In this document: positions 9,931 to 50,665 of the stretch, one piece after another
Position numbering within the stretch: the stretch's first letter is position 1
Layout of the letters: the number at the start of each line of letters is the position of its first letter
Source of the DNA: Botryllus schlosseri
Lineage: Eukaryota
Reading direction: 5' to 3'
Assembly: GCA_051294905.1 (NCBI GenBank)
Contig: CM119381.1
Span: forward strand, 19,406,001 to 19,470,000
Length of the DNA stretch: 64,000 bases
Notes under the pieces: model-generated
Seen by the model: the letters and a program-made list of their open reading frames with translations, nothing else
The model's database searches: none
Told to the model about the DNA's origin: nothing
Program-made: the position numbers and the translations under genes

Positions 9931-11123
9931 AGTGACTACGTCTGTTCCTAAAGCCTGAACTAAAGCTGGTCAACAGAGGTATAACATTGTAGATTAGTGA
10001 CTGCGAAACACTTCTCGATACATAGTCTAAGTCGGTATTGAAATGACAAATATCATTCACATTTCACAGCAAACAGGATTGAAATTAGGCCAAATTATAA
10101 CAGTGTATATCGTACAACATGTATATAGCATAGATAGATCTTGAAGTACGGAATTTGAATTTGGAATGAATGATCATCATAGTAAATTAATCAAATTTGC
10201 ATTTGGAATATTCAAAAAAAACTAAAATTTCGATTTGGGAATCACAGCATGCACAAGCGTTTGCAATTTGGAAGAGAAAGACAGATTTGAATTTTGTGAA
10301 CGGACTGCCCTGCACGTACGGTACTGACGTACCGACTGCCCTTATTGTGCACTTGAATGAACCGGGTAATTCAGTACCATAGGCTATACCAGACCGGGTA
10401 GAAATAAAAAATCGACATTACATATATGCTAAATTATGATTCAACAACGCTATTGATGTAAACGCCGAGCAGGGAGAAATAATATCATCTCATAATAATA
10501 TAAAATATCCGCAGCCATTACTCAACTAGTGATCCTGCGCCACCACACCAAGCAAAATCCCCAAAGTTGCCAAACACCGAAATGTCCGAAATATATTGAC
10601 ATTGGCGCCTGGTATTCGGTCAAGCGTTAATTTTCTGAAAATATTACGGCTCGGCTGTGTCCGGTACCAACCGGATCTCAATGCCGGTTAAATATCATGA
10701 AAAAATCCCCATGGATTTCATCTAGTTATTCTTCAACTATGTACTGTACACTGTACAGTTTGGTTTAAGTTCAATAATTGACGAATTTATCATACATTCG
10801 ACGTAGAAGCCATGCACGTTACTTCTTGTGCATGGGTTACCAAGGCGATGAAGTAAATCGATATATGTAGAGAGGTACTTCCCCGATTTTGAGCCGCAGT
10901 TCGGCTGAAGATAAAAACGATAGATCGAAACAGTCCGACATTGTTGCTGTGTTGCAGACTTTAGCGCGAGGAGTTATGCTGATTGTGGAAATATATCAGA
11001 TACGTTTGATAGAATGAATGGATGTAGCTAGAACGTGAATATAATCGATGTATGATTTGAGGACGAGTAGTACACGTCAGATTCCGTGAGCATGATCATC
11101 CTGATCCAGGTCGTGAGTCAAAG

Positions 11124-11865
11124 GTATGTAAATTTGCGGGCAGGTCTTCGTTTGTTCCCAAACATTATTCACTGACCCTGGACTTGAGTTAAGTTAGGTT
11201 ACGTTACGGGATTAGGGCAAGTGTTCGGTTAACTTGGTAACGGTCCGCAGAGTGAAATAGGTGGCAAGTGGCAATGTCACGTGAAGCTTTCCTTTTTTTT
11301 TATTATATACGGTACTCAATTATTCTATGCAAGGAACCCTTCTATCACACGCAACTTGATACCGAAAACATCCACTGTTTTGTTTGTCTGGTGAAGATTC
11401 GGGGACTGAGAGGCTATGTGTAATTTTAATTCTAAGTGAATCATCAACATTAATTTGTAATTGTAACTCCATCGTCCTATATTACAATCAAATCACAATC
11501 TAGTGCCGCAATCAATATAGAACAACGTCAAAAAGTCTCTGTTTCCATCTTGAAATAGCCAATTTTATTGTGTTCAAATGCCAGAGAATTCCAAATTATA
11601 CTATACAAATGAAATCTCAAATGAAAACGCATTATGGATATGCATTAAGGATTGATTGGAAAGCATCAATGAAAAATGCTAACATTGGCTCTTGTTTATA
11701 GCAGCAATCTATAAAGATACAAAAGTTAGGCCATAACCTATGGCAGGCTATATTAAACTGGTGTCATATTTTTGCAAAACTAGTTTTGCACGCCTTGTCA
11801 TCCTTATTTTCGATTTCCAATAACATTATATTGGTTTAATAATATAATGTACACTTCAATTTCAG
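11124..11865 (+). other. Putative 5'-UTR intron of the AKNA-like gene
   Basis: Donor AAG|GTATGT at 11124 and acceptor TTCAATTTCAG at 11865, 83 nt upstream of the ATG at 11949. Confidence 0.45.
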
Positions 11866-11948: not shown

Positions 11949-14900
11949 ATGTCAAACTCCCCTCCTCAGTTGAGCCAACAATCGTTGGAAGAGTTTGAAG
12001 AATACGAGCGAATCATAGAACAAAACCGGGCTGTCGACAGCAGCGACAGTGACGACTCGTCAAATTCGCAAACAACTCCCAAAAAACCTCACGGCCGGCT
12101 GCCTGCTGATACTGGCTATCACAGTGTTGGAGATTTTACGTTTTCGATACAAGATCCCACGTCCAGCGATAGAAACGACGACAGGGTGTCATCGAATTCG
12201 ACAAGCGATGCTGCAAGCGTTAAAAGCGCGCGATCATCCGCGCGAATGCGAAATAATGCATCACATGCACAATCTTCCGATATCGATGACGACAAAAGTG
12301 AAAAATCTGCAACCTTTGCGAGTGCGTCAATAGAGCAAAACGAGAATATTGATCCAGTCCAAAGCGGCACTGACGACGATGGGAAACTTGTCGCCACCTT
12401 TGGTACGACAGAAAACTTCCAGGCGCTACTACAAAGACAACTGGATGACGCAGAGGAAGAATCCAGCAGCTCTGAGGAGGAGCCGACCCCTGTAGTCGAA
12501 GAGAAACGGCCCGCGACCACTCCAAGCCCCAGAGTTCAACTGCCCCGTCCTAGAAAACCGGCCTACATGAGCCGAACCACGAGATCCCCGGCTGCCAATA
12601 GAGCGCGCCGCGCCAGTCAGAAATCAAAAACGTGGGCGCCACGTTCCCATTCGCCGGGATTTCCGGAAAGCAGCGACGATCTGAGCGTACATTCGGACGC
12701 GTCCAGGACTGAATTGCGAAGGAAGTTACGAAAGGAGAGAGTCGAGAGAGAAAAAGAGAAATCCGTTAAGCACCAGCTGCAGAGCGAGTACGACGATTTG
12801 TTGACCAAGTACGCGGAAGCCGAAAATGTCATCGATCAATTAAGAATCGGAGCGAAAATCGACATCATGGCACAGCTTCCCGATGACGCCGACATGGAGA
12901 AGTTGAAGAAATCACAAGAGGAATATGATACTGCAAGGTCCGAGCCAATTTTGGACCTTTCACATTCTCCGAGATCAACACGTGATGCTGTCACTGATAG
13001 CAGCCTCAAGCTTCCTGCTGCAGCTAACCGCGAGTTTGCGCGTATAGCGTTGATACACGACGCAGACGAATTGCGAGGTCAGATGGAGTCTTTCGCGGCG
13101 CTTCTGGACGAAGGCCACCACATTTCCGACCGAGAGAAAAGAGATGTGCTGGACAGCATAATCAGCAATGTCCACAAGTTAGAAAATGATCGGATGAAGG
13201 CAGCTAGGGATCATGAAGCCGTCCGGCAAGCTGCGATATTAACCGGGAATGCGAGCGGCGCGCTCCTCGAAGATTTTGATCCACAATTGGAAATTGCTGG
13301 TAAGATTTTTCAACTGAATCGACTTTTGGAGGATTTAAAGGATAAGGTAGCCGTGGGGTCAAGTTTACCGCAGACGCCGACATCCGGACGAAGGCAATTT
13401 ACTACAGACGAGGCGTCGGAAACCAGCGAGTCCTGGAACAGCAACATCGACGATAGGTTCAACCAGCAGTTGAAACTTTACAACAAACCGGCGTTGGCTG
13501 ATGAGCAGTCGGACACGACCGTGTCTAGTCATTTCTTGTCTAGCGACGATACCACAGTCGAGTTTCCAGTGGATAGGGAATCGCGACGCGATTTATCAAA
13601 ACAGGGTAGCGACGATATGCCGGAAAGGTTTTTAAGGCCTGTATCAAGCCGCAGGAATAGTTCGTCGAAGGGTACGTCGCGTACCGTGATCAGTAACGGC
13701 GACTCGAGTCCGTCTCGCAGTGTGAGGAGCAGTTATTCACCGTCTAAAGTGGATTCGATGTCGCAAAAGTCCCCGGATTCGCGAAGAAATTCGAAAAGTC
13801 GATTGCCCGTGCCGGTATCTTCATTGACGAATGAGCGCCCGGACAGAGCGGGTGGCAATAGGAAAAAGTCGCCTTCCAGCAATGAAATGGACGGGGACAG
13901 TGGCTTTGTAGGGTCTGTGAGCAGTAGGGAATCGATGGCGGCCAAGTCGCCCCGTGCTGCGTCGCGGAAACAGGAGTTATCGCCTGTTTTATCAGTACCA
14001 CCTAGTGAACGCAGCACGGTCTCTCAGTCGCAGCAAACCCGAGGGTTGAAGCCGTCGGCCAGACCTAGATCGGCATCGCGACATTCAAACGTGTCGGCGC
14101 CACAGTCCACGTACACCCAAGACGATACGAGAAACGAATCAGACTACTTCAAGCCGGAAACAACCAAAAGCTCTGCGTCGAGTAGAAAAGGGCAGAAGAA
14201 AAAAGCCCCGAAATCAGAAGACGGTAGTAGCGTGTGGTCTGTGCCGGTAAGATCGGCACCCCCTATTCCGTCCCATGTCAGAATCCGCAAAGGCGTGTCG
14301 GGAACACCGCTTCATTCTTCGGCGCCTTCTCAAAACACATCGCTACGAGAAACGCTGGGGCACGGCTCTGAAAAATCGAGACCCAGCAGCAGGAGATCGA
14401 CCGCGAGCAGGGACAGCGCTCTGGATTTGATTCGCGGCGAAATAGCGAGACTCCGGCAGGAGCTTGTGGATAATCAAAAGGCGGCCGAAACACGGTCCGA
14501 CAGGGGCCGGTCTGCGGACCGTAAGCAAAGCAGAAGAAGAAGTTACGCTTCCGAAGATCTCAGCACAGAGACAGAATCACCCACGCAAACCGAGAAGACA
14601 TCCGCTAGGCAAGGACGTAGCAGGAGACGACATTCGACCCAGGGAAGACGCAGCATTTCGAAAGGCTCTGAAAACACCGGGATCACTGTAATCGAGAGAC
14701 GAGACGCGAAAAGTGGCAGCGACATTCCGCTTAATCAAGCGCACGAGCAAGCTGTAAAGGAGGAAACAGTTCCGAAAGGCCACTGGGAGTATATACCGCC
14801 GTATTTTTCTCCAGCCGTTGGTCCGCAAATTCTCACCCCGAGACACGTGCCAGTTCCTACTGTAGTCGCTACCCCGCTGCCCCAGCCTGCGATGGTGCAA

Positions 14901-15287
14901 CTCGAACCTGCTTTTTACAGCCCCGTTCGGTACCCTTCGCCGGCTAGGATTTACGTTCCGATACCCGCTTACGAATCTCCGAAGTCCTCGTTTCGACCGG
15001 AACGCATTGTTACGGTTCGTACGCGGCAAGACAGCCCGAGGAGGTCCGGTAGGACGAGGGACGCGGAAGAAAACGATAGGCCTTTAAGACGAAGCCACCT
15101 CAGATCTCCAGTGAAAAGGTCGTCGTCGGTGCCCCCGCTTCGGCAAAGCATCCTAGATCCGCAGTTGAGCCTGTCCCTGCAAAGAGCGGAAAGGGCGGCC
15201 GATACCCTGCAGCGCAAGTCGAGGTCCATGTACCGGAGTTTGAGGGATACGTACAGCAAGGCAGAACTTTCTTTATCGTACGTTTAA
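11949..15287 (+). CDS. AKNA: AKNA-like microtubule-organisation protein, single coding exon
   Basis: EYDDLLTKYAEAENVIDQLRIGAK matches the AKNA-domain signature as I recall it. Also present: a DSGFVGS motif, a C-terminal L..SLQRA..AA..L helix and long Ser/Arg-rich disordered linkers. No clear GRP AT-hook seen. Confidence 0.78.
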   Translation: MSNSPPQLSQQSLEEFEEYERIIEQNRAVDSSDSDDSSNSQTTPKKPHGRLPADTGYHSVGDFTFSIQDPTSSDRNDDRVSSNSTSDAASVKSARSSARMRNNASHAQSSDIDDDKSEKSATFASASIEQNENIDPVQSGTDDDGKLVATFGTTENFQALLQRQLDDAEEESSSSEEEPTPVVEEKRPATTPSPRVQLPRPRKPAYMSRTTRSPAANRARRASQKSKTWAPRSHSPGFPESSDDLSVHSDASRTELRRKLRKERVEREKEKSVKHQLQSEYDDLLTKYAEAENVIDQLRIGAKIDIMAQLPDDADMEKLKKSQEEYDTARSEPILDLSHSPRSTRDAVTDSSLKLPAAANREFARIALIHDADELRGQMESFAALLDEGHHISDREKRDVLDSIISNVHKLENDRMKAARDHEAVRQAAILTGNASGALLEDFDPQLEIAGKIFQLNRLLEDLKDKVAVGSSLPQTPTSGRRQFTTDEASETSESWNSNIDDRFNQQLKLYNKPALADEQSDTTVSSHFLSSDDTTVEFPVDRESRRDLSKQGSDDMPERFLRPVSSRRNSSSKGTSRTVISNGDSSPSRSVRSSYSPSKVDSMSQKSPDSRRNSKSRLPVPVSSLTNERPDRAGGNRKKSPSSNEMDGDSGFVGSVSSRESMAAKSPRAASRKQELSPVLSVPPSERSTVSQSQQTRGLKPSARPRSASRHSNVSAPQSTYTQDDTRNESDYFKPETTKSSASSRKGQKKKAPKSEDGSSVWSVPVRSAPPIPSHVRIRKGVSGTPLHSSAPSQNTSLRETLGHGSEKSRPSSRRSTASRDSALDLIRGEIARLRQELVDNQKAAETRSDRGRSADRKQSRRRSYASEDLSTETESPTQTEKTSARQGRSRRRHSTQGRRSISKGSENTGITVIERRDAKSGSDIPLNQAHEQAVKEETVPKGHWEYIPPYFSPAVGPQILTPRHVPVPTVVATPLPQPAMVQLEPAFYSPVRYPSPARIYVPIPAYESPKSSFRPERIVTVRTRQDSPRRSGRTRDAEENDRPLRRSHLRSPVKRSSSVPPLRQSILDPQLSLSLQRAERAADTLQRKSRSMYRSLRDTYSKAELSLSYV

Positions 15288-18801: not shown

Positions 18802-21800
18802 ATGGATAAGTATGCTGGATTGCCAAGTTGGATACAAAAGTCAAAAAAAACTTTGAGGCAAACGCAGGTAATTAGCGGCACGTTACCTCTGTCCTCAGAC
18901 ACATGTTCCTAATACACTAAATATATGTTATCGGAATTAATCCCTTAATATAATGGACTGCGATTCAATAAAATTACCGGTGTTTCAGTGTACAAATGCT
19001 GTTGATTTATGCTTTTCGCCAAGGTCATAATTTAAACATGGTATTCATTTCACTAAAGTAGCCTGCTTTTGTGTGATAGGAATGGCAGACCTTTACCATG
19101 AAGCTTTATGATGTCGTCCATCATCAAATGCACGAGATGGGTGTCAGCTCATTTCATGAACTCAACCCATCGGAGAAAGAACTATTGTTACAAAGAGGAT
19201 TCCATGCTCTGAGGAAGAGTGAGTTACTACGGGTGTAAATCATGTGAAAGACAATTTGTACTGATCAAATGTTGACCTTAAGTTACCGATTAAAATGAAA
19301 CTTGATATTAGCTCGTTTGATTAAATACGACCATATTTCATCTGAAATCCACGTTGACAGTCTTAATTAAGATAACTTTGTTGTCGTTATACTTTACTCG
19401 CGCAGGTTTTACTGTACGAAAAGGAATTTACTTTGAAGTATGCTCTCCAGAACAATTGCTCCATAAAAATTATTGCGTGCACTTGAACAATTGTTCCGCT
19501 GTCGTATCATGATGGCCTCCGCCATATCCACTCAAAGATGGGTTAAATAGCACTTGAACTGTTCCATTAATATGGACAGGATATCATGTCCTTGTGTGAA
19601 AGACGTTATCTGCAAACATCTCGTTTCATAGACTAGCAGCAATTTTTATGGAAAGAGCGTAATACCGTACACTAATACACTTTGCACTCAATCTCCTTAT
19701 AGAGTGTATACCTCCAGCAATATGATACCTTTGTTCCTTATTGGTAGGCCTACTTGGTAATTAATACTAACGTTTTTTCCAATATCTTTCAGCGGAAGCT
19801 TATCACAACTTACTGGAGGTTGTTTCCGACACTCTGGATGAATCTGTGAGCAGAGAAGCAGACAAATTGTCAAAGGAAAAGATTCAGACCAAGTCTAGGC
19901 TCGAAATTTTGCAAGATGAATGCGGCAAAGCAGTTGTGAGTGGCTAAATTATGATGATTGATTTTGCCTATAAATCACAAGCTGAATCGCCCCATACCAG
20001 GGACATTGCGATATATTCAGTGGTGACGCAATAGTAACCATTCAAATTACCACTCATGTATAGGGCTTTTGTACCATACGTCTGTGGTCTTGACTAAAAA
20101 CAAAAAAGGTCTACATTTCGACTCGACCTCCGTTTTACCCAATTTGTTACGGAACTCAGACGTTCACTGTGTCAAGGTCGAGTTTCTGATGGCATTTGAA
20201 TACTTTTTCTAGAAGAAAAGGACATTCAGGTGTCCTCTGAGGACACTTTCAATTTATTGAAATAAGGGGAAAAATCCTCACTCATCATGTACCATGTGGG
20301 TTGACGAATTTGCCATGGTTCTCTCTATCTGCCCTACAGTACCACGCCACATTTGTGGGCCGAATGAGATAGCACTGAGAAGTGTACACCAGTTGTAGGC
20401 TACCAAACTTGAAGGCTTCACATATATCAGCGATCTGGAACGTCCTAACACTACTCCCCGATCTCTTTTCAATTCTGTATTTTACATGAACTCATGCATT
20501 GTATGAACTAAAAAATTGGACCCATAATTCGTGACCCTTATGAATTTCAATAACGAACATGCTTGTCTCCAGACAGCTCTTTTACAAAAATGGCCGGACA
20601 GCAAATCATCACTCCGACAATGCCTCAACGTCGACACACCGGTTGAATTGCGATACGTAATGTGGAAGAACTTTTTGAAGAATACGAAAGGTACCCTATT
20701 TTTTGCAAGACCACCCACTGGTCTGTGCTTTTATTTTGTTCCTACTATTATGTCATTTCATACTACTTCACTCCTTCAGTGAAAGAAGAGTATTTGATGC
20801 TTGTCGCCAGCAATCCGGAAAAGCTTGTTTCGTCGTTGGATTTTGAAATATCCCAAAAGTGCAAAATGCTTCTGGCATCGGATCCTACACTGAAGGGAAT
20901 TTCGAATAAAAGTTGTGAGTACTTTGGTACTAGATCACTTTGCTTTCATAAACTCAAAAGGGAAACATGTATGGTATTCTCAATCACGTAGACCCCCAAC
21001 TCGAATCTGAGTTGCACGTAAAGCAGCGACACTATTGACTAACTCAGAATCTTGTGTGTAATACGTTGAATGGAAAATATGAAAAATAAAAACACAGCCA
21101 CATAAATTTGAGACACATCATACAATGGTATTGCATCACAAGACTGGCGTATTATCAGTTCATCAAAAACACCATTTAAATACGAGAAATATACAATATA
21201 CGCCTACATTTCGCCATCATCACATAATATTATGTTCAGTAATTTCTCTACTGAACCTAAGGAATGCATATCCTGCATATTTCTATGCTGTCCGCACCAG
21301 TCCTGGGAATATTCCGGACCTAGAGGACTTTTTGCATGCCGGGATGCTCCAATCACGATGTAATGATATTCGGTGAAATGTCAATCTCGCTTTGCCTTGC
21401 CCCTTCCTTTCTTGAATATTCTGCTTCCGCCTCTTTTTAACATAGGCTGAAAACAAGGAGATGGCTGTTTTGGTGAATGCTGTTGTGAAGTCAGACAAAT
21501 ACTACCCAAAGGCAACACTACTCTTATTGTAATGTATGCATATCACTCACTACCAAGTGAAGTTTACCTTCCTCCTTTAAATTGTTATTGATGATAACTG
21601 CAATAGATGTGAAGTGAGCATCACTACAGATCAGAGCCTGTGAGGGCCAGGTTATGCCTATTTGTACTACCAGTACCTAATCAAGTGAAATTTATAAGAC
21701 AACTGGGCAAAAGAGCATTTGTATCACTGCTACTGAATGTATTTTCAAATGTGCCTATTTGAGGTGTCGTTGGTCATTTCGTGCCTGTCACGAAGAGGCA

Positions 21801-24800
21801 TCTTGCTATTTCAAAAGAGACAGCTAACTGCTAAAAGTGCACGTTGATAAAATGGACTTTTTGAAACTCATGATATTCATCTTCAGCTTCTACTTGGGAT
21901 AGTGTTGACACGTCTTTGAAATTGCTAATTGTAAATGCATAGTAGGGTAGTGTTAATTGATAGCGTTATTTCTAGTTCTACTTAGCTTTTGTCAACTCCA
22001 GTATCAAGAGTTTGGTAGATTTATGATATAAGATTGTTAAAATTAGTAGTGATGGATTCCTTTGTCTACCACTACAGAAATGATTTTAAATGGCACCACT
22101 TCTACTTAAGTTGATTTGAATGGTGCTGCTCTACTTGACCTAAATGACCAGATGACTATTACCATATAACCATTGGCCGCTCACCTGTACTTCAGTATGG
22201 TCCATCTTTCTAAGGACGGCCTCGTCGTCTCCCTTGCTGCGTTGCACAAGGATTTGCGCCTCTAGCTTTTTGAGAAAATCCTGCTTATAGATACGATCGT
22301 CGAGCACTTGACATACGCACAGCTTGTCCATATTCGGATTGTGGTGTTGGCAGTTCGTACTTTTTGCCGACAGTTCGTCCACCAACTGGATGGCAAACAT
22401 GTTCACTGATTCGTCGGAATCTTCAATGTCTATCACAAGCTTGATGTCACTCAAGGGCAGCATGCGGATGTGCTGAAAACATAAATTGAATATTATCGTT
22501 ATTTATCCATGCGGATGAATTTCTACTTTCCATTGGATAAATTTCAAGCTATCAAAGAGATGTGCATTGAGAAATTGTACTTCTTTACCTCCAAAGGAAC
22601 GGGGCAAATGAATAAACAGTGGCCTAGTTGTAATTTCACACAAAAATTCTCTCTTATCCTACTATTCATCAGTTTCACCCCCTCAGCACACGGAAATATT
22701 TGAGGAACCCTGGTTGGGGTCACGCATCTCAAAAAATTGACTAAACGTACGAAACAGCTTTACCAATAAGGGAATTGGTAGAAAATTTCCGCTCTGCAAT
22801 TGCAAGACACCTGTAGGGAACTGTGCATTGCAAAAGCGGGGGTCATAGATAGATGTCAATTAATAAATAATGCTTCTGAAAAGATCAATTCTATACCGGG
22901 ATAGGCAACGCTGCTATCCACCGCTAGCGAGTAGCGAGTATTCATGCAATGAATACTCTTGTTCCATTTTTGTCCACTGTGCTAGTATAGCAGATAAGAA
23001 TATATCTACTGTAGAACCATATATAGAATGACCCATATTGTAAAAACAATCTCATTGAATGAATAAAGCTGAAGGATTCGTGAAGTTTTTTAATCACTGG
23101 TGTTTGTTGCGAATGTACATTGGAGGATGATTCGGTTATGAAAAGGTAAAAACCAGTGATTGGACTATGTGCAGTGTCTATCCTCCTGTGCGTCAATGTA
23201 TTCAATCCTAGCTCACCTTGAGTAATACAGTTCCGGGCGAGTGTTTGAATTTTGACACTTCGATCATGTCAGTTAGTAAATATAGAGCAAGCCTGTCGCC
23301 AACTCGATAAAGACCTTCGTTCAAAGAGGTGACGTTGGTCCTTGCTACAAAAGAACGGTTTGAAGAAACGATTTCCGCAGGACACGATTCCACCTGGTAG
23401 TAATAAAAATGAAGACATTGTTGATATTGGGTCTGTAAAACACTCGGCTATTCAAGTTTATCAGTGGTGAAACACTGCCTACATGTTTACAACACGGACA
23501 TGAACGATATTGCTGAAAACATTGGGATGTAAAATTAATAATAGAGATGTGGCCTGTTGTGACAAAGGCTTAGATGAAACTTCGCACAGTTCTAGAATAT
23601 TGTAACTACTGTATGAACGTAGAACGTGTGATGCAATAATGTAGGACATAGGCAGGCATGGTTATTTTTGGCATTTCGGGAACCAAACCATGCCAGTGAA
23701 CTTTTATATTTATTTGTGAGAACTAGCTGCTTTTCTTCTTGACCAATAAATAGATTGACCTAATACTGTATACGTGCCAGTCACCATCACATTAGATTAG
23801 GTAACCTTCTCCATGAGAAATGAATGAATATATTTGATGAGCTGGAGTTAGTGCATTGCACAAGTGCACAGATTAGAGCTTACTTCATAAATTATATCGA
23901 ATATCTTCAGTTTCCCTTCTGTCTTTCTCTTATCTTCGTTGATATGCGACAGGACTTGCTTTAAAGATTCTTTTGCCTTTTCTAGTTCCTTGTGATCACG
24001 AAGTTCTTCCGGTGTTCTTCTTTGCATGTCTACAATAAATGTTGAATAGATAATTATATGTAGAAAGATTGGACCGCATCATTTTTCTGGAATCTCGTCA
24101 AATTCATTTCATCAAATCACATATTATTTGGATTTTCTGCATGTTAGGTTGAGGTACTGACATTCATTATACGATTACCCACCGCTGATCAAGAGAGACA
24201 TGCTCGGCAAACGTTGCACAGGTCGGATCATTAAAGCGTCTAGCGGTTGCTTTAGGCACAGTGGATTGTTGAAGCAATTAATCAGGAATTCTGAGAATTT
24301 CTGGTTCGACTTCTGCTGTTTCAGTATCAGGTCTTTACCCATGTCGAAAAAGTTCACGTATGGAGGATACGCCTGAATGTATAAGGAAGATTATGTTATT
24401 TTGAATCATGGTATGGCATCTTTAATCTATATGCATCTGGTGATCTGCTGAAGGCACAGAAAACAAACTTTGACACACTTAATGAAAGTAATAATCAGCA
24501 GTCATGGAGATATTGTAGCTTCCGAATTGTTGGTGGAACAACATGGATACTTCTTGGGTATTTTATTCTTCCTAGAATTCACATGACTCAACAGGTGACC
24601 AATTCTATACAATTTCCTGTTACTCTAGGAAACTGCAACCGTTGGCATATTCTTATTTCCCATATCCATTGAAAAAGTATAAAGCAGTCACTTCAGATGT
24701 GATTACCTTGGTGAGTTGGCCTTGATACTTTGTAATTATGCTCGCAATGCAACAATCTTCATCCCAGTCAGAGATCACATTGCTCAATTCTTGGTGAATC

Positions 24801-27800
24801 TCCGAGTGCACCGACAGTATGTCCGATATTCCGTTGAATATATTTTTTATATCTTCTGCCGCCAGAATTGGATCTTTATCTTCTACCGCTCTTTCTAGTG
24901 GTTGCTTGTACACCTGCAGTGGCACATACTTAATACCAAAACCAATGCAGCAGACATGCTGTATGGTCGTCAGTGGATTATAATGTCTCTTTCATTACTG
25001 AGCATAAGCAATTCCAGCAGGCTACCATACATTCCAATTTCTACCTCAATGATGATCTTCAAATTCCGAATGTATGTCGTCTCTGTCTGAAGTAGTTCCA
25101 TCGCCGTTAGTTGCCTTTTGGATGGGGGTGTGCTTGTGATTGAGTCACTGAAAAGGAAATTTTCTCTTTAAACTGTTGCGATATACATCCAATGATGTAG
25201 CATTTCTGAATATTGAATCGTTGATAATTCTACATCATAATCAAGTCATGAAAACAGATCAGCATACGTATCGCCATTCTTAGACTCCTCGTCGCTTGGC
25301 TCAGTAATCAGTGGGATTGTTAAGCTGTGGTGTCTTTTCAATTGGCGAGATGCGGGTGGCGACCGCTCTCTGACAGTTTGATGGAATTTAGGAACATTGA
25401 TTCTGCTCCATTCTTCACCGTGCGGGCTGAATTTTCTGTCATGCTCTGTCAGCAATGGTGTTTTATCGCTATCTAGCTGATATCCTGAAGTTGTGGGGGA
25501 CTGGATATCACAGGAAGAACGCTGATTTTCTGTATGCTGTGAATCATCGTCTCCATAATCGCTGGACAGCAATGGCTTTCTCTCAGAATCCTAGATTAAT
25601 AATTCATGTTTTTCATGTGGCCATACATTGTAAAAACACGTCTTACATCTGACGAACCCTTGATGCCGAAGCACTGCAAAATCTTGCCGAAGCAATTCCC
25701 CATAGTTTCTTTCACAATCGTTACCCAATGTACAAACGCATGACACTCTTATTTTCTATGCTCTAATTCAAAGCAGCTGTAATTACTACATGAAAACTGT
25801 TAGCCGATTAAATCTAAACTCCCTGCAAACCATCCGACTAGCAATACATATTAGTCTAAATGCACTATAGAGCGATTCGATACCCATTCTCCATGCATGA
25901 CATGAATAATTTGATGACTTCCTATGCAAACTACCCAAACATTCGATACCGCACACTTAGGCACAGACCTGTTGTTATCAAAACTACTACACTACAAAAT
26001 AGCAAGGCTTCTCGCAAGTGCCGACACAATTGATCAGGAAGTGCTTTTTCATACATATTCAAAAACAAAACCATTGTAGCTGAAACAAGTATTACATACT
26101 GCATACACCAATACGATAGCAGGATGATAATCCAGCTGCTTTCTAACTCAATTAAATTACCGTCATATCATAAGCTTGTTATAAAGCGACTCCTTCCACC
26201 GTCGGCATTCATGTGATATCTAGCTTACTGAGGTATTTTGATAGGGAATCCACCTTATCTCATGATACTGTCGTATAGTCACATTTTCAAAAATTCCAAG
26301 ACTTTTCCTAAGGTATGATTGGAAAAGAGATGAAGGATTCAAATGTCGGCGAGTGCTACAAAGCTTAATTAATTGCTAGCTTGTCTTTGTGACAAAACAC
26401 ACTGAAACTGTTGATTTCCTGAGTTGCCATGTCTATTAAATTTATAATAGCCTGCAGCTTCCCATTGCCATAGCCTGAACTACAAGTATGCTCGGTATGA
26501 TAGGCGGCTATTACGCTTTCTTCAAAGGTTGTGAAACACCAATAATATGCTCGATTGACTGAACTAATATCAACGTCATGTGAGACGCTTGTAATCGTGA
26601 TCATTCAGCAGATGTCAAAGTACAAATGACTCATTACATATTTTGATTTAGAAATTCCATATTGCAAGAATATTTCTGGCCCGATGTCCATAGAAAACTA
26701 ATATGTGAAACTTATTCATGACTGCAACCTGCAAGGCTTCTTTATTTGACTTATAATGCCATCCTTCAGAAAAGCAATGGTTGACTTTGTTGTGATGATG
26801 GAATTATGGTGATACATTTTAGCACTGACAGGTGACAGTCAGGTCCCGTTATGCTGTTGACAAGTCTGAGATATATAAGTACATAGTGTCTGTTGGTTGC
26901 TAACCTCATAATTTCTATAGGCATGCATACGTCAAGTTGAGATAACATAGAAATAGATGACTTCGGCCTTTTGCAAAGTATATAAGGTGATGATTTATCA
27001 TATTCAATTTGAAATGTTAATATTTGAGAATCATTGCAAATGGATGTTTGCAGAATATAACTAAACACGTTGCTATAGCAAAAGTAAATAGGATCCAGTG
27101 ATCAGTTTAGCAAGTGCGGAAAGACCAGTTCTTTTTAACAAGGTCTCAACCCACTCCTTTCCATAGTACAACACTTTCTGGTTTCCCTGACATCCTTACC
27201 TTCTCATTAAAACATCTTCTTGAAGGTCCCCACTTCTGTTGTCTTTTTTCTTGAGACCTAATCTTCTCCTAATTGGGCTAATAAGCACTTTTGCACCAGC
27301 ACCTCCATCTTGAATAAGCGTTGCTCCCAGGGCACTTAGTGATGTGATCAAACTTAGTTTATAGAAAAAACTGAAGCTTGTCACAGGCCCTGGCATGATG
27401 AAGCGTATGATACTGCAGGCATCTGTAATTGAGAGAAATATCTGTTAAAATATGTTTTTGATGATTGCGGTTCAGTAGTGATGTACTCAGTGCAGAGGTA
27501 ACGAAACATTGATATGAGTCGGAGTCAGATATGACTGAAATGAATCTGGTTGAATTCCCACATGGATAATAGGTCTATGGGAGTGGTGCAGGATGGCTTA
27601 CACAGAGATGTAACTTCCAATTCATCTGATTGCTATATTATGACTCGGGATGTCATTATCCCACAATGTAAAGCCTTGCTATGCTAATCATAAATCAGCC
27701 GATTACTACCATACTCCATGCAGACTAAGGAAGCTAAGAATCACTTCACAAATTATGTCAAAGAATTGACTGAATAATGCAAGTATCTCGATAGATAAAA

Positions 27801-30800
27801 AGTACTTTATACTTCATTATTGACCATCTCCATAATTATATAATACGATTGGGTTATTGTTGAACACTACAAGGGTAGGAGTGACGAAATGATTTTTTTG
27901 TCAGCCATAAATAATTTTCGGTCATAACATAACATGGTATATAATTGAAAAAACAAGTTTCAAGACACTTCCATAAACAAAATCATATTTTTCACCACCA
28001 GCAGACTTGAAGCGAGGCAACCAAGGCCTTCTAACTACACAACATCATGGGTGGTTTATCTACAAGTTTTGAACCATGAAAAATCTTATGAACTTGTCTT
28101 ACAGTAAGTGCAGCACTCTGCAGTGTGTAATCTTACTTGCAACTGCTAACATCTTTGTCAGATACTGCTTCAGATTCCCCTGACTAATGGCCAGAAAATT
28201 TGTGACTACATTGCGCTTGTACGTTTCTGCTCCCACTACTGCCACGGTGCCGAGTAGAGATGCCCTCGCTGCAAGATATCAGAAACAAATAATTTTAAAC
28301 AATTATTTTGAAGCACATCGCCAACTTACCAACAAAATTCAGCCAGCTGTGAATATACCAAAATAGAGTCCCGAGCAACCCCACTTCTTCATATGGTAAA
28401 AAATTTCTTGCTGAAATTAGGTGTAGAAACAAACTGGAGCAGGCTAGGCATCCGATGGCTTGGAAGAGGTGCTCGGGATTCATTTTCCGATTGTGTAACA
28501 AAGTATGGTATAATTATGTAGCTAGCTTACATCTGTTATGCGGACAGTGCATGTTACTGTTATGGAGATATTCAACATGTATTGTTAGGTAAAAATATCA
28601 GCACCTCTACAAAAACTTTGACTATGTGTACTGGTTTGAGGTGGATTGATTCGTGTCATCCACTGTATTTGATTAGTTAGAACTACTAGCTACATATTCC
28701 ATTGTGACCTCACCATGGATAAATTGTGCCAACTACCTTTTACGTCAGCAAAGCTGTTCTGCCACCTAATGGAGTTGCCCTACCTGACAGATTGAAGCGA
28801 AATGATAGCCGAATAACCTTTAGTTTACACCAGATGTACTTGTTACGGATTGAATTATATTTTTGCACCATCTGTTAAATAATTCAGGACAATATATTTC
28901 CTAATTGTATTAGCCTACATCAAAGGTTCTCAACTTCCCTTGGACAACGGGCCGCATTCTAGCAGCAGAAAACGGTGCGGGCCGCAAAACATTATCATGT
29001 ATTTGTGGGCTACTATTAAATTAAGGCTACTGTAGCCTATTTACGAGGCGTATACTGGCATTTAGTAAATTTTTATGCATTCTAAGGCATTAATGGATAG
29101 CGTTCGTATATTTGCGGTTGCTGTTTTTTGTGAGAATATGTTTCTTCCAGCTTCGCAAGTAATGGAGCGTGCAATGCATTCGTTGCCTATTCGGCATATG
29201 CACCTTTAAACTAACCCGTCCACAATATAACCTAACTGTATGTCTCAATGCGGGAGCAAGAAAGTTCAAAATTACGGTAATTTTTTCGTGACAGAGGCCA
29301 TTATCACATTGAGCTCTCAGTGGTATGAGAAGCGTCATTTCTGAGCAAACCAATCAACCCTTCTCATTTCCTTCCATAGATGGAGCCCTGCACCAATAGT
29401 TACAAAAGTCAGCTTGGTCAATTTGATGATTTACTCTAGTCCCGTGCCCACGCTTGCCCTGCCAGTATTTCCTCTGCAAATAGTAAATATGTCCCCTGTG
29501 ATAAAATGCACCTAATTACCTAATTAATTATGAAATGTCTGTGGAGTCGATGGATTTGTCCAATGCTAGGTTGCTAAAGTAAGTCTATACGCGGCAACGT
29601 GTTGCAGAACATGTTGTAAAAGATATACCGACATTGCTGTTACTCTTCTGGCAAGGTTGAATCATATAACTGCAGCTTCGAAATTTGTCAGGTGATGTTG
29701 TCCTTGCTGCTAAGATTCGGTAACAGCGAATATTCGCACAGTATGTTAAAGTTTCATTGAAGTGACGCCTTCTCTAGCATATTTCTTGGGTTTCGCGATA
29801 CACCAAGCAATTTCGAACGATGCGTCTTAAACATTGTCGGCAATTCTACCAACGCCTCAGAATATGGATTTCCGGCTTGACAACTAGCTGGTGACGTTTT
29901 CTAAGATCAGACGATACGTATAACTATACAGAAGAAACTGCCGTGGCATCATTTTAGGCTTCTACGCTTCGTTACGACAACTGTATTTCGACAAACATGA
30001 CAAATCGGTTTCTCATTAATATCTGAGAAAGCAAACCCAGTTTTCGCTGTTTAATTTCCCGTTCCTTGTTCTTGTTTTTGTTCGAACGATTTGCAGTGAG
30101 TGAAACACTCTTTAAAAGTGTACTACACTACAGCAGGAATCTCTTGGAACAAGAGTTCATCTAAATACCGATTCAAAACAATAACAATCAACTCGATAGC
30201 ATATATCAAGAAACTAGAACACAACAAAGAATGAGTAGTCAATTACAATTACAAATAGCCTATAATTAATATGTAACAATACTGTGTCAGTAGTAATTGC
30301 GTTCATAATGAAAGACGTCGCGGGCCGCAAAATAACTGTCTGCGGGCCGCGGGTTGAGAACCCCTGGCCTACATCAAACCAGCGATGACTCCTGTCCATG
30401 TTGATAACAGGCTTCAGCTTTATTAACAGTTCTTGGATTCAGTTGTGATACGACCCAAAGAGACCCATAGAGAGCACATAATTTGAGTACTGAAAAAATT
30501 GATCTCTCTTCACTCGACTCTAATCATTACAATTAATACTCGATTCAGATTTATTTAAGTACTTGAATCATTGAAATAACCCATATTGTGATGTTAACTA
30601 CACTTGCAGATATCTGCTATATAGCAAGATCTAACAGACCATTGCTCACTGTATGAAATCACTGATCTTGATCACTCATAATCATCAACCAATACATACA
30701 CAGGAGACACACTTTGAGTGGGAGGTTATGTTTACATTTAAATCGCACTTTCTTAGTTCAAACACATTGCAGGCAGTTGAAGCTATACATCGCCTTTGTA

Positions 30801-33800: not shown

Positions 33801-36800
33801 AACATATGTGACTCCGAAATTTGGGCCTAAAACTCGACCGCGAGAAAAGCGCTTCAGTCGTGAACGATCGAAAATTGTCGCCGTTGTCGCGATAAGCTAC
33901 GTAAACTCTCTGCTTACGCTGAGTAGAATGGATGTGATCACAAGTAAAGGTGAAAACATCCACCCAAGTGTAGGGTCTTGGGGCGAAGGTCACTACCATA
34001 AAATCACATGGATGCCATCATGAATATTATTAAATACGATCAAAACCCTCCAAATGTCACTCTCTAGCATCATATAATTGTCAAAAACGGTTGCATACTT
34101 TACATTTTGGCTTCATTTCAATTTTGACAGTTCACCGTTCCGCCAAACATTTTTTGAAATTTTACCGGTCCGCGAGGCGAAAAAGGTTGAGAACCACTGC
34201 TGTAAAGAGTCACGCTTTCACGATTGGATACGAATAACTTTTTACAGTCGTGCCCGTGACGGATTGCAGCTTGACATTCTCCCGCGTGCGCCTGTCGCCA
34301 CCTCTAACCTTCGCGCAGTTTCTACATTTTGTAGACTGGTTCGGTCAATTGCACTACATCTTCCGTACCGTGTGTGCAGCAGTTAGGGCGTCTTTCGTCA
34401 CTTCTTTGATCTACGCATGTTGCCCATCTCTGATAGGGTGGCATTTGCGTGTTTTCAAGCGGTTTGGCTTATATCTTTCTGACAGTACTGGTCAGTGGTC
34501 ATGGTCGGTCAGCTTGCATTCATCAGGGGGAAATTGAATCTACCACGTAAGCCCTCTTGTTCGTAGAATTGGCATGCTGAATCCGAAGTCTTATCATAGT
34601 GTGATCTTGCATAAGGCCAGGCTTGACCATGATTCAATATTGATTATGCCATATTTTCGAGCTGATAATATCAGACGGAATTATATGATCCCACTGTATC
34701 TGGAAACAGGGCCTGATTTCTATCGTATCCAATCCAAGAAATTCACATAATATATATATATGTATATTTATACCGTATATAATAAATTTATACAAAAATA
34801 TTGATAGCGATATGGCAAGTGTAACGACGCTATAAAAACCAATGTCTTTGTAATTTGCAATTCACGTCTTTATCAATTGTCCTTAAATCGTAGAAAGGCT
34901 AGCCTACTGCACGACATGCGAAATTGATGAAATGAACAGTAAACGCGGTGGAAAGTGGATGATGCGCCGTAAACATAACATAAACCATCGACGCCAGTAT
35001 TTCTATCTGTACGAGACACACAATGTACAGTGCGATCAAATGAACAGATCAGATGGAGGATATCGAAGCTATACCACGCGCGGTTCATCCATCAAACATC
35101 TACCTTGACCTACTTGTATTAATGCCCGACAGAGCTGGGACATTCATAGTGTCCATGACCATTAACTGCCGTATAAACATAGTCATCAAATGTATTATGA
35201 AATCAATATGGCACGAAGGCTTTGCTAACAACTAGTACGGCCACTTAGTGGTTACGAAAGAATAGAAAACATTGCCAAACCATACCATAATGGGGTCGTT
35301 TTCATAAAAGACGTGATTACAGCGCGATATGTCGGTTATTTTTCGTACTTTTCATATAAAAATCGGCACAGAAAATCCCGGCGATGCTTACAAATCGGAA
35401 CGACGTTACGTAGGCATGCTCTATGAGTCTACGGTGAATGGATGAAAGTATATATTCAAATTGCTGCCTGAGAGTTGCTGTGCTGCTTTGTTCGCGTACA
35501 CATGCCCGTTATTGGTTCTGCGACCTTCCGGCGACACCCAATCAAGTTCAGTCAATACATTACATTGCGTCGCAATCTTTCAGTTTTTCTTCCATTTGCT
35601 GATTTTTTTCGTGATGGGAGTCACGATCGTCTTGGCTCCAGCGCCGCCGTCCTCTGCGATCGTGACGACCAAGGCGCTCAGCGAAGTCATGAAGCTGAGC
35701 TTGTAGAAGAAGGTAAAGCTCGTGACTGGTCCCGGAGTGATGAAACGGATAAAGATAAAAAATGCTGCCGAAAAATAATTGTGCGTTAGTAGTACTACAG
35801 TACATGGGTTTTGGTCGGCAGGGAGCAAATGACGCTTTTGGCCGCTCAATTTTCGATTGGTTATTGTGACGTTATATGTATTGGCTACGTCATAATGAGA
35901 GACTTCCGGTTTTGTGGAAATTATTTCCCCACAAATTTTAAAGCGCCATTTCCAAATATTGCTACGCCTGCGGTAATAAAGACTATAGATTCTAATAACC
36001 TCAATGATTTGAGAAGTATGCTGGACCTCTTATATGGGATATTTATCTTCTTGTTTTTTTCAAATCCAACTTGTAAAAGGACACGGAATATGGTAACAAC
36101 TAAACACAGATTTGAACCGCCTCTGCCGTGCATACAAAAATACACCATGATAGCCGGATTACTTGACAAGCGGTCACATTGGACACAACCATGCGTTTGC
36201 AGCTCACACTTGAGACCAACGAAGTCAGCTTACTTGCAGCCATCAATAATTTCGTGATATACAGCTTCAGTTTGCCGCGACTGATTTTCAGAGTGTCCGT
36301 GACGATGTTTGGTTTGTAAACCTCCGCGCCAATTGCGGCCGCCGTCGCGAGCAAAGATAATCTTGCTAAAAAGATTTGTGATTCTGATGAGATCTGCATT
36401 TTGGAATATCTCGTCATTCAAGTCTTACCGACTACATTCGACCAGTAATGCATGTACCAAAACAACACCCCAAGAAGCCAAACTTCTCCGTCTGGCAGGA
36501 AATTTCCGGCTGAAATCAGATGCACGAGAAGGCTGAAACCGGCTAGGCCTCCGGTGGCAAGGGTAAAATGATCGGCGTTCATCATCTTGAGTTGTTGAGT
36601 ACCGCGACACGACACTATTACATGCTTTCATAATAATCGTATAGAGTAGTTATTGTACAGGCCGTTGGAGGGAGTGGTAAGCGCGAGAATCGCAGATCAG
36701 GATACTACTATCGGGACTTGCTTTTGCGCATTGGAAAATATGTATAGTAGTATATCGATTACTCATTTCCGTTTGGCCTACTGCGATTCCCCATGCTATG

Positions 36801-49363: not shown

Positions 49364-50665
49364 AATATTGGGCGCTTCTTCGTTTTACGATCATGACAAG
49401 CCAGTGTCCCCCCATGATACCAACAAATGTTTCCCATGAACACGAACAAAAATTTATGAACGTCTAAATAAATTTTTTTTTTGCCTTTGGATATATTGAT
49501 ATTAGGGTTAGGGGAGGTGGGATTGGAGGAGGTGGGATATTAGGGTTGGGGGGGGTGGGATATTAGGGTTAGGGGAGGTGGGATATTAGGGTTGGGGAGG
49601 TGGGATATTAGGGTTGGGGGAGGTGGGATATTAGGGTTAGGGGAGGTGGGGTATTAGGGTTATGATTAGGGGAGGTGGGGTATTAGGGTTAGGGGAGGTG
49701 GAATATTAGGGTTAGGGGAGGTGGGATATTAGGGTTAGGGGTTACGATTAGGGGAGGTGGGATATTAGGGTTAGGGGACGTGGAATATTAGGGTTAGGGG
49801 AGGTGGGATATTAGGGTTGGGGAGGTGGGATATTAGGGTTGGGGGAGGTGGGATATTAGGGTTAGGGGAGGTGGGGTATTAGGGTTATGATTAGGGGAGG
49901 TGGGGTATTAGGGTTAGGGGAGGTGGAATATTAGGGTTAGGGGAGGTGGGATATTAGGGTTAGGGGTTACGATTAGGGGAGGTGGGATATTAGGGTTAGG
50001 GGACGTGGAATATTAGGGTTAGGGGAGGTGGGATATTAGGGTTAGGGGTTACGATTAGGGGAGGTGGGATATTAGGGTTAGGGGACGCGGGATATAGGGT
50101 TGGAGAGAGGGGGATGTTAGGGTTGGGGAGAGGGGTGATATTAGGGTTGGAGAAGAGGGTTAGGGACATGATATCCAACCCTAATATCCCACCTCCCCGA
50201 ACCCTAACATCCCCGAACCCTAATATCACCCCTCTCCCCAACCCTAATATCCCGCCTCCCCTAACATCACCCTCTCCCTCAACCCTAATATCCCACCTCC
50301 CCTAATCCTAACCTAACCCTAACATCCCCTCTTCCCCAACCCTAATATCACCCCCTCTCCCCAACCCTAATATCCCACCTCCCCTAATCCTAACCTAACC
50401 TAACCCTAATCATAACCCTAACCTAATCCTAACCCTAACATCCCCTCTCCCTTAACCCTAATATCTCCCCTCTCCTCAACCCTAACATCCCCCTCACGTA
50501 ACCCTAATATACCCCCTCCGACAACCCTAATCCGTCTCTCCCAAGGAAAAAAACAATTTATTTTGATGTTTATAAATTTTTGTTCGTGTTCATGGGAAGC
50601 ATTTGTTGGTGTCATGGGGGAACACTGGCTTGTCATGATCGTAAAACGAAGAAGCGCCGAATATT
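49364..50665. mobile_element. Foldback element: about 130-bp unique TIRs enclosing inverted 23-bp TTAGGG-containing minisatellites
   Basis: 49364-49490 and 50540-50665 are inverted copies (AATATT.GGCGCTTCTTCGTTTTACGATCATGACAAGCCAGTGT...). The unit GATATTAGGGTTAGGGGAGGTGG repeats over about 49497-50165 and its complement over about 50176-50535, with the axis near GATATC at 50170-50175. Confidence 0.8.

What the first reader, a model, noticed from the sequence alone, without database searches (positions are those of the whole stretch)
21381..25703. ECT2-like RhoGEF with BRCT autoinhibition replaced by a lipid-anchor and lysosomal-sorting N-terminus
Seen: the DH-PH module is clearly ECT2-type, yet the in-frame upstream exons encode MGNCFGKILQCFGIKGSSD|DSERKPLL...DSDKTPLL...; I found no BRCT-coding exons upstream in the window. 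Gly2 with Cys4 and Cys11 suggests N-myristoylation and palmitoylation (position 6 is Gly rather than the preferred Ser/Thr). E22-RKP-LL and D61-KTP-LL are perfect [DE]xxxL[LI] motifs. The C-tail is a short polybasic stretch (KRGGSRIFKKGRGKAKRD). Established: canonical ECT2 is autoinhibited by N-terminal BRCT repeats and drives RhoA in cytokinesis; an MG-Cys start plus dileucine is the endolysosomal targeting scheme of LAMTOR1/Ego1. Inference: a constitutively membrane-tethered, endosome-, lysosome- or vacuole-directed Rho GEF, an architecture I do not recognise as described. This is the strongest novel-system candidate in the window.
Basis: partly seen in the sequence, partly recalled or inferred. 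Interest (0 to 1): 0.82.

Follow-up and report, generated by a model that had tools for sequence, protein, structure and literature searches.

The report
Membrane-anchored ECT2-like RhoGEF, two alternative anchors
This sea-squirt gene encodes a Rho activator of the ECT2 type that has lost the usual BRCT regulatory domains and, by alternative first exons conserved across ascidians, carries either a four-helix membrane domain or a lipid-anchor plus dileucine signal resembling the lysosomal tag of LAMTOR1.

Summary
On the minus strand, nine GT..AG exons (25703 to 21381) give a 518-aa protein: an MGNC... N-terminus, a DH domain, an ECT2-type PH domain and a polybasic tail. The window has no BRCT exon. 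A canonical BRCT-bearing ECT2 lies on another chromosome.

One RNA contig joins shared exon 3 (25147) to an upstream exon ending at 27200. That exon and two more (28483-28137) encode a four-helix membrane domain. This domain is the N-terminus of the closest relatives, which NCBI names 'protein ECT2-like' in Ciona, Styela, Clavelina and Phallusia.

Those species also have a second isoform starting MGN(K)C...C...E-x-x-P-L-L, like the window's. In Ciona the exon order is the same: TM exons, then MG exons, then shared exons. So there are two alternative membrane anchors, and their use differs between samples.

The genome's own LAMTOR1 starts with the same kind of signal, but lysosomal targeting is untested. 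The family is not ECT2L. A TM-only duplicate lies at 35580-36585. I found no paper describing this, and the scan had not noted it on other DNA.

The parts
28330..28483 (-). TM first exon P1: start codon, helix 1 and the beginning of helix 2 of the membrane domain
   Evidence: Model (donor GTAAGT). Homologous to residues about 8-52 of Clavelina P0001 and Styela P0154.
28137..28268 (-). TM exon P2: helix 2 and the basic cytosolic loop
   Evidence: AG/GT bounded and phase-compatible. tblastn match to P0154 and P0001.
27200..27422 (-). TM exon P3: helices 3-4 (IRFIMPGP...), basic linker RRRLGLKKK. Its donor joins shared exon 3. If left unspliced, a TAA follows at once.
   Evidence: An X1 contig runs from 25149 into sequence that maps uniquely to 27202-27231. 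In frame with exon 3. Matches the long form of Styela isoform X1, P0270.
25647..25703 (-). MG first exon, coding part (MGNCFGKILQCFGIKGSSD). RNA contigs continue upstream to 25927 and 26093 as 5' UTR, so it has its own promoter inside the intron that follows P3.
   Evidence: Joint 25590/25647 and contigs 25675-25927 and 25675-26093, with no joint entering the exon from upstream.
25268..25590 (-). MG exon 2: ERKPLL, DKTPLL and a disordered acidic/Ser-rich linker
   Evidence: Joint 25147/25268 in X1, X15 and X2. No Pfam match.
25045..25147 (-). Shared exon 3: start of the DH domain (PSKRQLTAMELLQTE, CR1)
   Evidence: PF00621 positions 2-21. Acceptor used by both N-terminal modules.
23884..24913 (-). 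Shared exons 4-6 (24913-24707, 24372-24183, 24029-23884): rest of the DH domain, including IRPVQRLPS
   Evidence: PF00621 positions 24-180. Exon 5 scores 51 bits against human ECT2 6l30. Joints.
22185..23393 (-). Shared exons 7-8 (23393-23217, 22472-22185): ECT2-type PH domain
   Evidence: PF21242 E 1.6e-10 and 2.6e-9. Joints.
21381..21446 (-). Last coding exon: polybasic tail and stop. The 3' UTR runs on to about 21066.
   Evidence: Joint 21446/22185 and read ends with adaptor at 21066-21113. The tail is conserved in the family.
35580..36585 (-). Tandem duplicate of the three TM exons (36585-36429, 36365-36234, 35764-35580). It encodes a stand-alone 157-aa membrane protein that ends in TGA and has no phase-compatible donor.
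   Evidence: 59% identical to the proximal module and 71% to a 154-aa transcript-derived protein, P0298. RNA-like runs hold 0.28-0.49 of its words, about its exon fraction.

Best explanation
The locus encodes the ascidian 'ECT2-like' RhoGEF. It has a catalytically intact DH domain, an ECT2-type PH domain and a short polybasic tail, and it has no BRCT repeats. It therefore cannot be recruited or autoinhibited the way cytokinetic ECT2 is. Instead it is fixed to a membrane through its N-terminus, and two alternative promoters choose the anchor. The upstream promoter (exons 28483-27200) gives a 561-aa form with a four-helix transmembrane bundle. Its topology is N-in/C-in by the positive-inside rule, so the GEF faces the cytosol. 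The internal promoter (exons 25703-25268) gives a 518-aa form that starts MGNC...C. This form is probably N-myristoylated on Gly2 and palmitoylated on the nearby cysteines, and the anchor is followed at residues 22-27 by an acidic dileucine ERKPLL. Shown: the gene models, the splicing, the conservation of both modules and their order in ascidians, the ECT2-type DH-PH, and the separate canonical ECT2. Inferred: lipidation, topology and GEF activity. Most speculative (about 0.35-0.4): that the lipid form is sorted by adaptor complexes to late endosomes or lysosomes as LAMTOR1 is, so that the two isoforms activate Rho on different membranes.
For: Gene models and frames. RNA joints for all introns of the MG form, plus a contig joining 27200 to 25147. 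Domains. The Styela orthologue's DH-PH scores 246 bits against human ECT2 (DH, PH and tail) with QTE and PVQRLPS conserved, against 65 bits for ECT2L. TM-DH-PH proteins occur in Clavelina, Ciona, Phallusia and Styela, and in four transcript-derived sequences. MG isoforms in Styela X3, Clavelina X2 and Ciona X1 share the MGN(K)C, second Cys and E-x-x-P-L-L layout. In Ciona the exon order is the same, TM x3 then MG x2 then shared. Canonical ECT2 with BRCT exons lies on C4 and groups with vertebrate ECT2 (SH-aLRT 99), while the TM family forms its own clade (97). AF2 predicts a four-helix bundle (pLDDT 73.5), and hydropathy gives four segments. The genome's own LAMTOR1 starts MGCLESC...DERTPIL. 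The LAMTOR1 N-terminus with these elements is sufficient for lysosome targeting: PMC7039192. Isoform share differs by sample. The exon2-exon3 joint versus the shared-exon contig is 16.8 vs 96.2 in X1 and 15.3 vs 17.4 in X2. In X23 there are 0 reads on that joint versus 5-21 on most of the others.
Against: There is no experimental evidence for lipidation, localisation or GEF activity. The 27200-25147 junction in this species rests on one contig of one run, and the P1-P2-P3 junctions were not seen directly. Styela has Arg at position 6, which fails the simple PROSITE myristoylation pattern. Dual acylation alone usually gives plasma-membrane localisation. Contig depths are a poor measure of expression, by the tool's own caveat. 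The helices are only moderately hydrophobic (1.4-1.9 on a 19-residue window) and the TM model has moderate confidence.
Confidence: 0.7

Rival explanations
1. One reading: the MGNC protein is the gene's single or main product, a constitutively lysosome-directed GEF.
For: The MGNC form is spliced and conserved. In X2 and X15 its exon2-exon3 joint depth is about equal to the shared-exon depth.
Against: A TM first-exon module is also spliced to exon 3 and is the form found in most relatives. In X1 and X23 the MGNC exons have roughly a fifth or less of the depth of the shared exons.
Confidence: 0.12
2. The lipid isoform sits at the plasma membrane or cell cortex, as Src-family and G-alpha dual-acylated proteins do. 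The dileucine only drives endocytic cycling. The gene then provides cortical RhoA activation independent of the central spindle, not lysosomal signalling.
For: MG-Cys dual acylation commonly targets the plasma membrane (general knowledge). The ECT2-type PH plus polybasic tail is a plasma-membrane phosphoinositide-binding module in ECT2 (general knowledge), and the tail is conserved here.
Against: The strictly conserved E-x-x-P-L-L about 11-16 residues after the last Cys, in four genera, matches the LAMTOR1 layout, including this genome's own LAMTOR1.
Confidence: 0.3
3. The TM exons belong to a separate small membrane-protein gene, and the 27200-25147 junction is a read-through chimera without function.
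For: A TAA follows the donor at once, so the unspliced product is a TM-only protein. A TM-only duplicate exists upstream, and a TM-only transcript exists in another species. Only one contig shows the junction.
Against: The fusion is in frame. TM-DH-PH in one ORF is found in at least eight relatives, including transcript-derived contigs of 1.9-2.3 kb. The Ciona gene has the same layout. The Styela long form aligns up to the junction.
Confidence: 0.05
4. It is the tunicate orthologue of vertebrate ECT2L, the known BRCT-less ECT2 relative.
For: Both lack BRCT. Databases name it 'ECT2-like'.
Against: The Styela orthologue scores 246 bits against ECT2 over DH, PH and tail. It scores 65 bits against ECT2L over the DH only, about the same as BCR at 60 bits, and PVQRLPS is absent from ECT2L. 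No ECT2L representative appeared among 179 significant hits to exon 5. No F-box or other Pfam match was found on the N-terminal exons.
Confidence: 0.03

Closest known systems
ECT2 / Pebble (cytokinetic RhoA GEF; human structure 6l30)
   Same: The DH domain has the conserved QTE and PVQRLPS motifs. The PH domain is of the ECT2-specific Pfam family PF21242. A basic tail follows the PH domain. Identity over DH-PH is about 35-40%.
   Different: No BRCT0-2 region. The N-terminus is a membrane anchor. The C-terminal tail is only about 20 residues. The family is a separate clade found so far only in tunicates, and the same genome keeps a canonical ECT2.
Machine-annotated 'protein ECT2-like' isoforms of Ciona intestinalis (XP_009858328, XP_002131614), Styela clava (XP_039249550-52), Clavelina lepadiformis (XP_076799787, XP_076799789) and Phallusia mammillata (CAB3240771)
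   Same: These are orthologues, 75% identical to Styela over DH-PH. They have the same two kinds of N-terminus, and in Ciona the same exon order.
   Different: They are predicted records without functional description. The window adds RNA-supported junctions in a further species and a tandem TM-only duplicate.
LAMTOR1/p18 N-terminal lysosome-targeting signal
   Same: Gly2, nearby cysteines and an acidic dileucine lie within the first 30 residues. The genome's own LAMTOR1 reads MGCLESC...DERTPIL. The LAMTOR1 segment is sufficient for lysosomal targeting of fusions (PMC7039192).
   Different: No sequence homology beyond the motif and a different exon structure, so it is an analogue, not a relative. 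Here the signal is attached to a GEF, not to a Ragulator scaffold.
ECT2L (ARHGEF32; structure 11xu)
   Same: A BRCT-less Dbl GEF distantly grouped with ECT2 (PMC5499878).
   Different: Only weak, DH-only similarity (65 bits), and different N-terminal domains.
Lipid-anchored Dbl GEFs such as Tiam1 (myristoylated) and p63RhoGEF (palmitoylated); from general knowledge, not tested here
   Same: The principle of holding a DH-PH at a membrane by N-terminal acylation.
   Different: Different GEF subfamilies. None is known to me to alternate with an integral-membrane N-terminus or to carry a LAMTOR1-like dileucine.

Membership tests
Dbl-family RhoGEF | DH domain (Pfam PF00621) covering the whole profile | tested here: met
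   Exons 3-6 match profile positions 2-21, 24-84, 88-148 and 153-180 in order. Exon 5 alone is over the cut-off (43.9 bits).
Dbl-family RhoGEF | Conserved catalytic motifs (CR1 Glu in QTE; CR3 PVQR used in ECT2 loss-of-function mutants, from general knowledge) | tested here: met
   MELLQTE and IRPVQRLPS are present in the window protein and invariant in the 14-sequence alignment. Aligned to 6l30.
ECT2 family | ECT2-specific PH domain (PF21242) | tested here: met
   Exons 7 and 8 give E 1.6e-10 and 2.6e-9, both over the cut-off.
ECT2 family | N-terminal BRCT repeats | tested here: not met
   No BRCT match in the window in six frames, with a positive control on C4. None in the orthologues' precomputed Pfam.
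ECT2 family | Groups with canonical ECT2 in a DH-PH tree | tested here: not met
   It forms a separate clade (SH-aLRT 97) outside the metazoan ECT2 group. The genome's C4 gene groups with vertebrate ECT2 (99). The stem is long, so the placement is uncertain.
ECT2L | Closer in sequence to ECT2L than to ECT2 | tested here: not met
   65 bits versus 246 bits.
LAMTOR1-type lipid plus dileucine lysosomal signal (a functional class, not a homology family) | Gly2 in an N-myristoylation context | tested here: met
   MGN start in all four species. PROSITE pattern G-{EDRKHPFYW}-x(2)-[STAGCN]-{P} fits the window, Ciona and Clavelina but not Styela, which has Arg6 (pattern from memory).
LAMTOR1-type lipid plus dileucine lysosomal signal (a functional class, not a homology family) | Cysteines next to the myristoyl-Gly | tested here: met
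   Cys4 and Cys11 in the window. Cys4 or Cys5 plus one to three further Cys by residue 16 in the other three species.
LAMTOR1-type lipid plus dileucine lysosomal signal (a functional class, not a homology family) | [DE]xxxL[LI] within about 30 residues of the N-terminus | tested here: met
   ERKPLL, EKKPLL, ERSPLL and ETEPLL at residues 22-28.
LAMTOR1-type lipid plus dileucine lysosomal signal (a functional class, not a homology family) | Actual lipidation and lysosomal localisation | not testable with these tools
   Needs labelling and imaging.
Known transmembrane domain families | Significant sequence or fold match of the four-helix N-terminal domain | tested here: not met
   Best Pfam match is TMEM128 at E 0.037, below the cut-off. 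Atlas scores are 0.80 or lower. Foldseek E is 0.38 or higher in both AlphaFold DB libraries.

The most novel reading that the evidence does not exclude
Ascidians evolved a Rho activator that is permanently installed on organelle membranes. Alternative promoters switch it between a lysosome-directed LAMTOR1-like lipid tag and a previously undescribed four-helix membrane domain. That domain also exists as a stand-alone protein (the upstream duplicate and P0298) and may pair with or compete against the GEF's own membrane domain. This would be a self-contained system for Rho signalling from endomembranes, with a new membrane domain acting as sensor or regulator and not merely as an anchor.
Probability: 0.2. 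Interest if true: 0.75.

Novelty: new variant of a known kind. Interest (0 to 1): 0.55.

Why it matters
ECT2 is the textbook example of a GEF controlled by BRCT-mediated autoinhibition and recruitment to the spindle midzone. Here a close structural relative has replaced that control with fixed membrane anchorage, in two interchangeable forms kept since before the ascidian orders split. To my knowledge, integral-membrane Dbl GEFs are rare, and no RhoGEF with a LAMTOR1-like lysosome tag has been described in the literature I could search. Ciona is easy to electroporate, so the two N-termini offer a direct test of whether Rho is activated on lysosomes or other endomembranes. They also offer a natural case of 'anchor swapping' by alternative promoters. 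The limits are that the family is known only from tunicates and that every functional step is still inferred.

Tried and rejected
1. ECT2L orthology was rejected. The BRCT-less representatives in the exon-5 search turned out to be partial ECT2s or distant sequences, not ECT2L.

2. A search with the Ciona MG N-terminal region (residues 1-190) found only itself. The variable linker is not conserved. The other MG isoforms were instead found as members of 90% clusters.

3. Identity of the membrane domain: Pfam, the ESM Atlas by features, and Foldseek against AlphaFold DB Swiss-Prot and clusters gave nothing significant. The TMEM128 lead (E 0.037) was not confirmed.

4. The distal TM module was considered as a third alternative N-terminus. 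It is rejected for now because it ends in TGA and has no GT in the required phase.

5. Derivation of the MG exon from the genome's LAMTOR1: only the motif layout is shared and the exon structure differs, so I treat it as analogy.

6. The supplement of the RhoGEF survey (PMC5499878) is not held, so I could not see how its authors classed the tunicate gene.

The window's own full-length isoforms were therefore never searched, folded or looked up directly. The Styela orthologue stood in for them.

8. No complex-prediction job was sent, because no binding claim is made.


Full report
**1. What is at the coordinates**

- The window is eukaryotic DNA of about 40% GC. It corresponds to C11:19406001-19470000 of a 495-Mb assembly.
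- On the minus strand, nine exons from 25703 to 21381, all with GT..AG borders, give an open frame of 518 aa.
- Scanned exon by exon, Pfam puts the RhoGEF/DH profile on exons 3-6 in collinear order (positions 2-180). It puts the ECT2-specific PH profile PF21242 on exons 7-8, and nothing on exon 2 or the last exon.
- Exon 5 alone scores 51 bits against human ECT2 (6l30) and about 20-26 bits against other GEFs.
- The protein starts MGNCFGKILQCFGIKGSSD, followed after the first intron by DSERKPLL. A second DKTPLL lies at residues 61-66. The protein ends in an 18-residue stretch with nine basic residues.

**2. RNA evidence**

- I laid one raw-read RNA-seq run (X23) and the contigs of three other runs from three studies on 21000-26900. 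All eight introns appear as joints with CT..AC ends on the plus strand.
  - 25147/25268 in X1, X15 and X2;
  - 25590/25647 in X23, X1, X15 and X2.
- Contigs extend upstream of the ATG to 25927 and 26093, and no joint enters exon 1 from upstream. Exon 1 is therefore a true first exon with its own promoter.
- One item did not fit: an X1 contig that matches up to 25149 and then continues for 251 nt into other sequence. Its first 30 letters map uniquely to 27202-27231.

**3. A second N-terminus**

- The sequence at 27422-27200 is an AG/GT-bounded exon, open in the frame that continues into exon 3.
- Together with exons 28483-28330 and 28268-28137 it gives a 561-aa protein. Its first 135 or so residues contain four hydrophobic segments.
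- This is not a chance read-through. A search of 1.8 billion representative proteins with exon 5 gave, as best full-length hits, proteins of 553 and 580 aa with the same kind of N-terminus.
- A follow-up search named the relatives:
  - 'protein ECT2-like' of Clavelina lepadiformis, Ciona intestinalis (isoform X2), Phallusia mammillata and Styela clava;
  - four unnamed proteins called on short contigs (1.9-2.3 kb).
- All carry RhoGEF and ECT2_PH and no BRCT. The next-best hits are canonical ECT2s at 39% identity with BRCT domains.
- An AF2 model built from an eight-sequence alignment gives a four-helix bundle: helices 3-24, 36-68, 81-104 and 114-138, pLDDT 73.5, pTM 0.67.
- Charge distribution:
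  - the H1-H2 loop is acidic;
  - the H2-H3 loop is basic;
  - RRRLGLKKK follows H4 (sequence).
  This fits an N-in/C-in topology with the GEF in the cytosol. That is an inference from the positive-inside rule.
- The domain has no significant relative in Pfam (best TMEM128, E 0.037, below cut-off), in the ESM Atlas by features, or by Foldseek in two AlphaFold DB libraries.

**4. The MG-Cys N-terminus is conserved too**

- Ciona isoform X1, Styela isoform X3 and Clavelina isoform X2 replace the membrane domain with N-termini that begin:
  - MGNKCSTFFKRCPCFGG...ETEPLL (Ciona);
  - MGNCWRKFVDCLCYYC...EKKPLL (Styela);
  - MGNCWNAIRRCFGC...ERSPLL (Clavelina).
- Aligned with the window's sequence, the invariant features are MGN, a Cys at position 4 or 5, a Cys at 11 or 12, and E-x-x-P-L-L at residues 22-28. 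The rest of the linker is free to vary.
- These genera represent three ascidian orders.
- In the Ciona genomic locus the order is three TM exons (10001-11764), then two MG exons (13978-14652), then the shared exon (14965). This is the same order as in the window.
- The two-promoter, two-anchor design is therefore old and maintained.

**5. Which isoform is used**

I compared the depth of the exon2-exon3 joint with the contig that covers the shared exons.

| Run | Exon2-exon3 joint | Shared exons or other joints |
|---|---|---|
| X1 | 16.8 | 96.2 |
| X2 | 15.3 | 17.4 |
| X15 | about 10 | 11 |
| X23 (raw reads) | 0 reads | 5-21 reads on most other joints (1 on 24913/25045) |

- In X23, exon 2 also has about a fifth of the depth of exon 4.
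- With the tool's caveat that contig depth is a poor measure, the MG form looks minor in X1 and X23 and the main form in X2 and X15. That points to sample-specific promoter use.

**6. Relation to ECT2, ECT2L and LAMTOR1**

- The genome has a second ECT2_PH locus on C4, with BRCT exons upstream.
- A sea-urchin ECT2 aligns along that locus from the N-terminal region through BRCT1-2, DH and PH to the tail, at 26018006-26031982.
- In a DH-PH tree that gene groups with vertebrate ECT2 (SH-aLRT 99). The window gene groups with Styela (100) inside a clade of the membrane-anchored family (97), which lies outside the canonical ECT2 group. The stem is long, so the age of the split is uncertain.
- The Styela orthologue scores 246 bits against human ECT2 over DH, PH and tail. 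It scores only 65 bits, DH only, against human ECT2L (11xu). So this is not ECT2L.
- A profile of ECT2 N-termini finds nothing in the window and six exons on C4.
- The genome's own LAMTOR1 first exon reads MGCLESCLKQEEGDPDERTPIL, the same layout as the GEF's MG exon pair.
- A JCB paper states that the first 39 residues of LAMTOR1, with myristoylation, palmitoylation and an acidic dileucine, suffice to place fusion proteins on lysosomes (PMC7039192).
It does not show localisation.

**7. The upstream duplicate**

- A second copy of the three TM exons lies at 36585-35580. It is 59% identical to the proximal module.
- It ends in TGA just after KKISKWKKN and has no GT in the phase needed to join exon 3. 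It therefore encodes a stand-alone 157-aa membrane protein.
- These two are the only copies in the genome.
- A 154-aa protein called on a short (1040-nt) Logan contig of a public run, whose organism is not recorded, is 71% identical and ends at the same place.
- RNA-like runs from several studies hold 0.28-0.49 of the locus's words, about its exon fraction. It is probably an expressed gene, but I could not lay reads on it.

**8. Literature**

- Searches for ECT2-like or Ect2 with Ciona, and for transmembrane RhoGEFs in tunicates, returned only the Dbl-family survey of Fort and Blangy (PMC5499878). That paper lists tunicate GEFs without describing this architecture in the text held. Other papers cite canonical ECT2.
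- The sequences are public as machine-annotated isoforms. I found no description of their N-termini.

**9. Verdict**

- The finding is best described as a tunicate-specific, BRCT-less ECT2 paralogue held on membranes by either of two alternative, conserved N-terminal anchors. It is accompanied in this genome by a TM-only duplicate.
- The gene structure and its conservation are well supported.
- Lipidation, topology, GEF activity and above all the target compartment are inferences that need bench tests.

Noticed in passing
window 35580-36585 (minus strand): Stand-alone 157-aa four-helix membrane protein gene, a tandem duplicate of the GEF's TM exons. It has an intact ORF and canonical splice sites. 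RNA-like runs hold about its exon fraction of words. A 154-aa counterpart (P0298), called on a short Logan contig, exists elsewhere.
   Followed up: partly
window 27196-27200 (minus strand): The donor of TM exon P3 overlaps a stop codon (AGA AG|G TAA). An unspliced transcript would therefore make a TM-only protein from the GEF gene itself.
   Followed up: no
L009 (G000:C8:242274-245381), minus strand: The genome's LAMTOR1 first exon starts MGCLESCLKQEEGDPDERTPIL, the same MG-Cys plus acidic (I/L)L layout as the GEF's MG isoform.
   Followed up: partly
window 11949-15287 (plus strand): Intronless 1112-aa ORF in a GC-rich stretch (49-51% GC against about 40% around it, AT skew 0.2). No Pfam match.
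   Followed up: partly
window 49498-50388: G-rich satellite built of TTAGGG-containing units (periods 23, 82 and 225), followed from 50179 by the complementary CCCTAA-type array. It looks like an interstitial telomere-like repeat in head-to-head orientation, and it explains the GC-skew spike.
   Followed up: no
G000:C6:13681869-13685351, C17:2481694-2485168, C71:6295-9769: Three loci with many BRCT repeats inside single open frames of 1215-1448 aa without introns. Two of them (C17 and C71) have identical scores. They may be a duplicated or assembly-duplicated intronless BRCT-repeat gene.
   Followed up: no
P0286 / P0010 (Logan/ENA, organism unknown): Divergent relative that groups with the membrane-anchored family. 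Its N-terminus is Ser/Asn-rich with a hydrophobic Cys cluster (FLLCFCCCS) in place of a TM bundle or MG start. This may be a third way of anchoring.
   Followed up: no
window 25120-25296: One X2 contig (depth 14.9) runs unspliced through intron 2, and X15 also covers several introns at low depth. This is either pre-mRNA or DNA carry-over in those runs.
   Followed up: no
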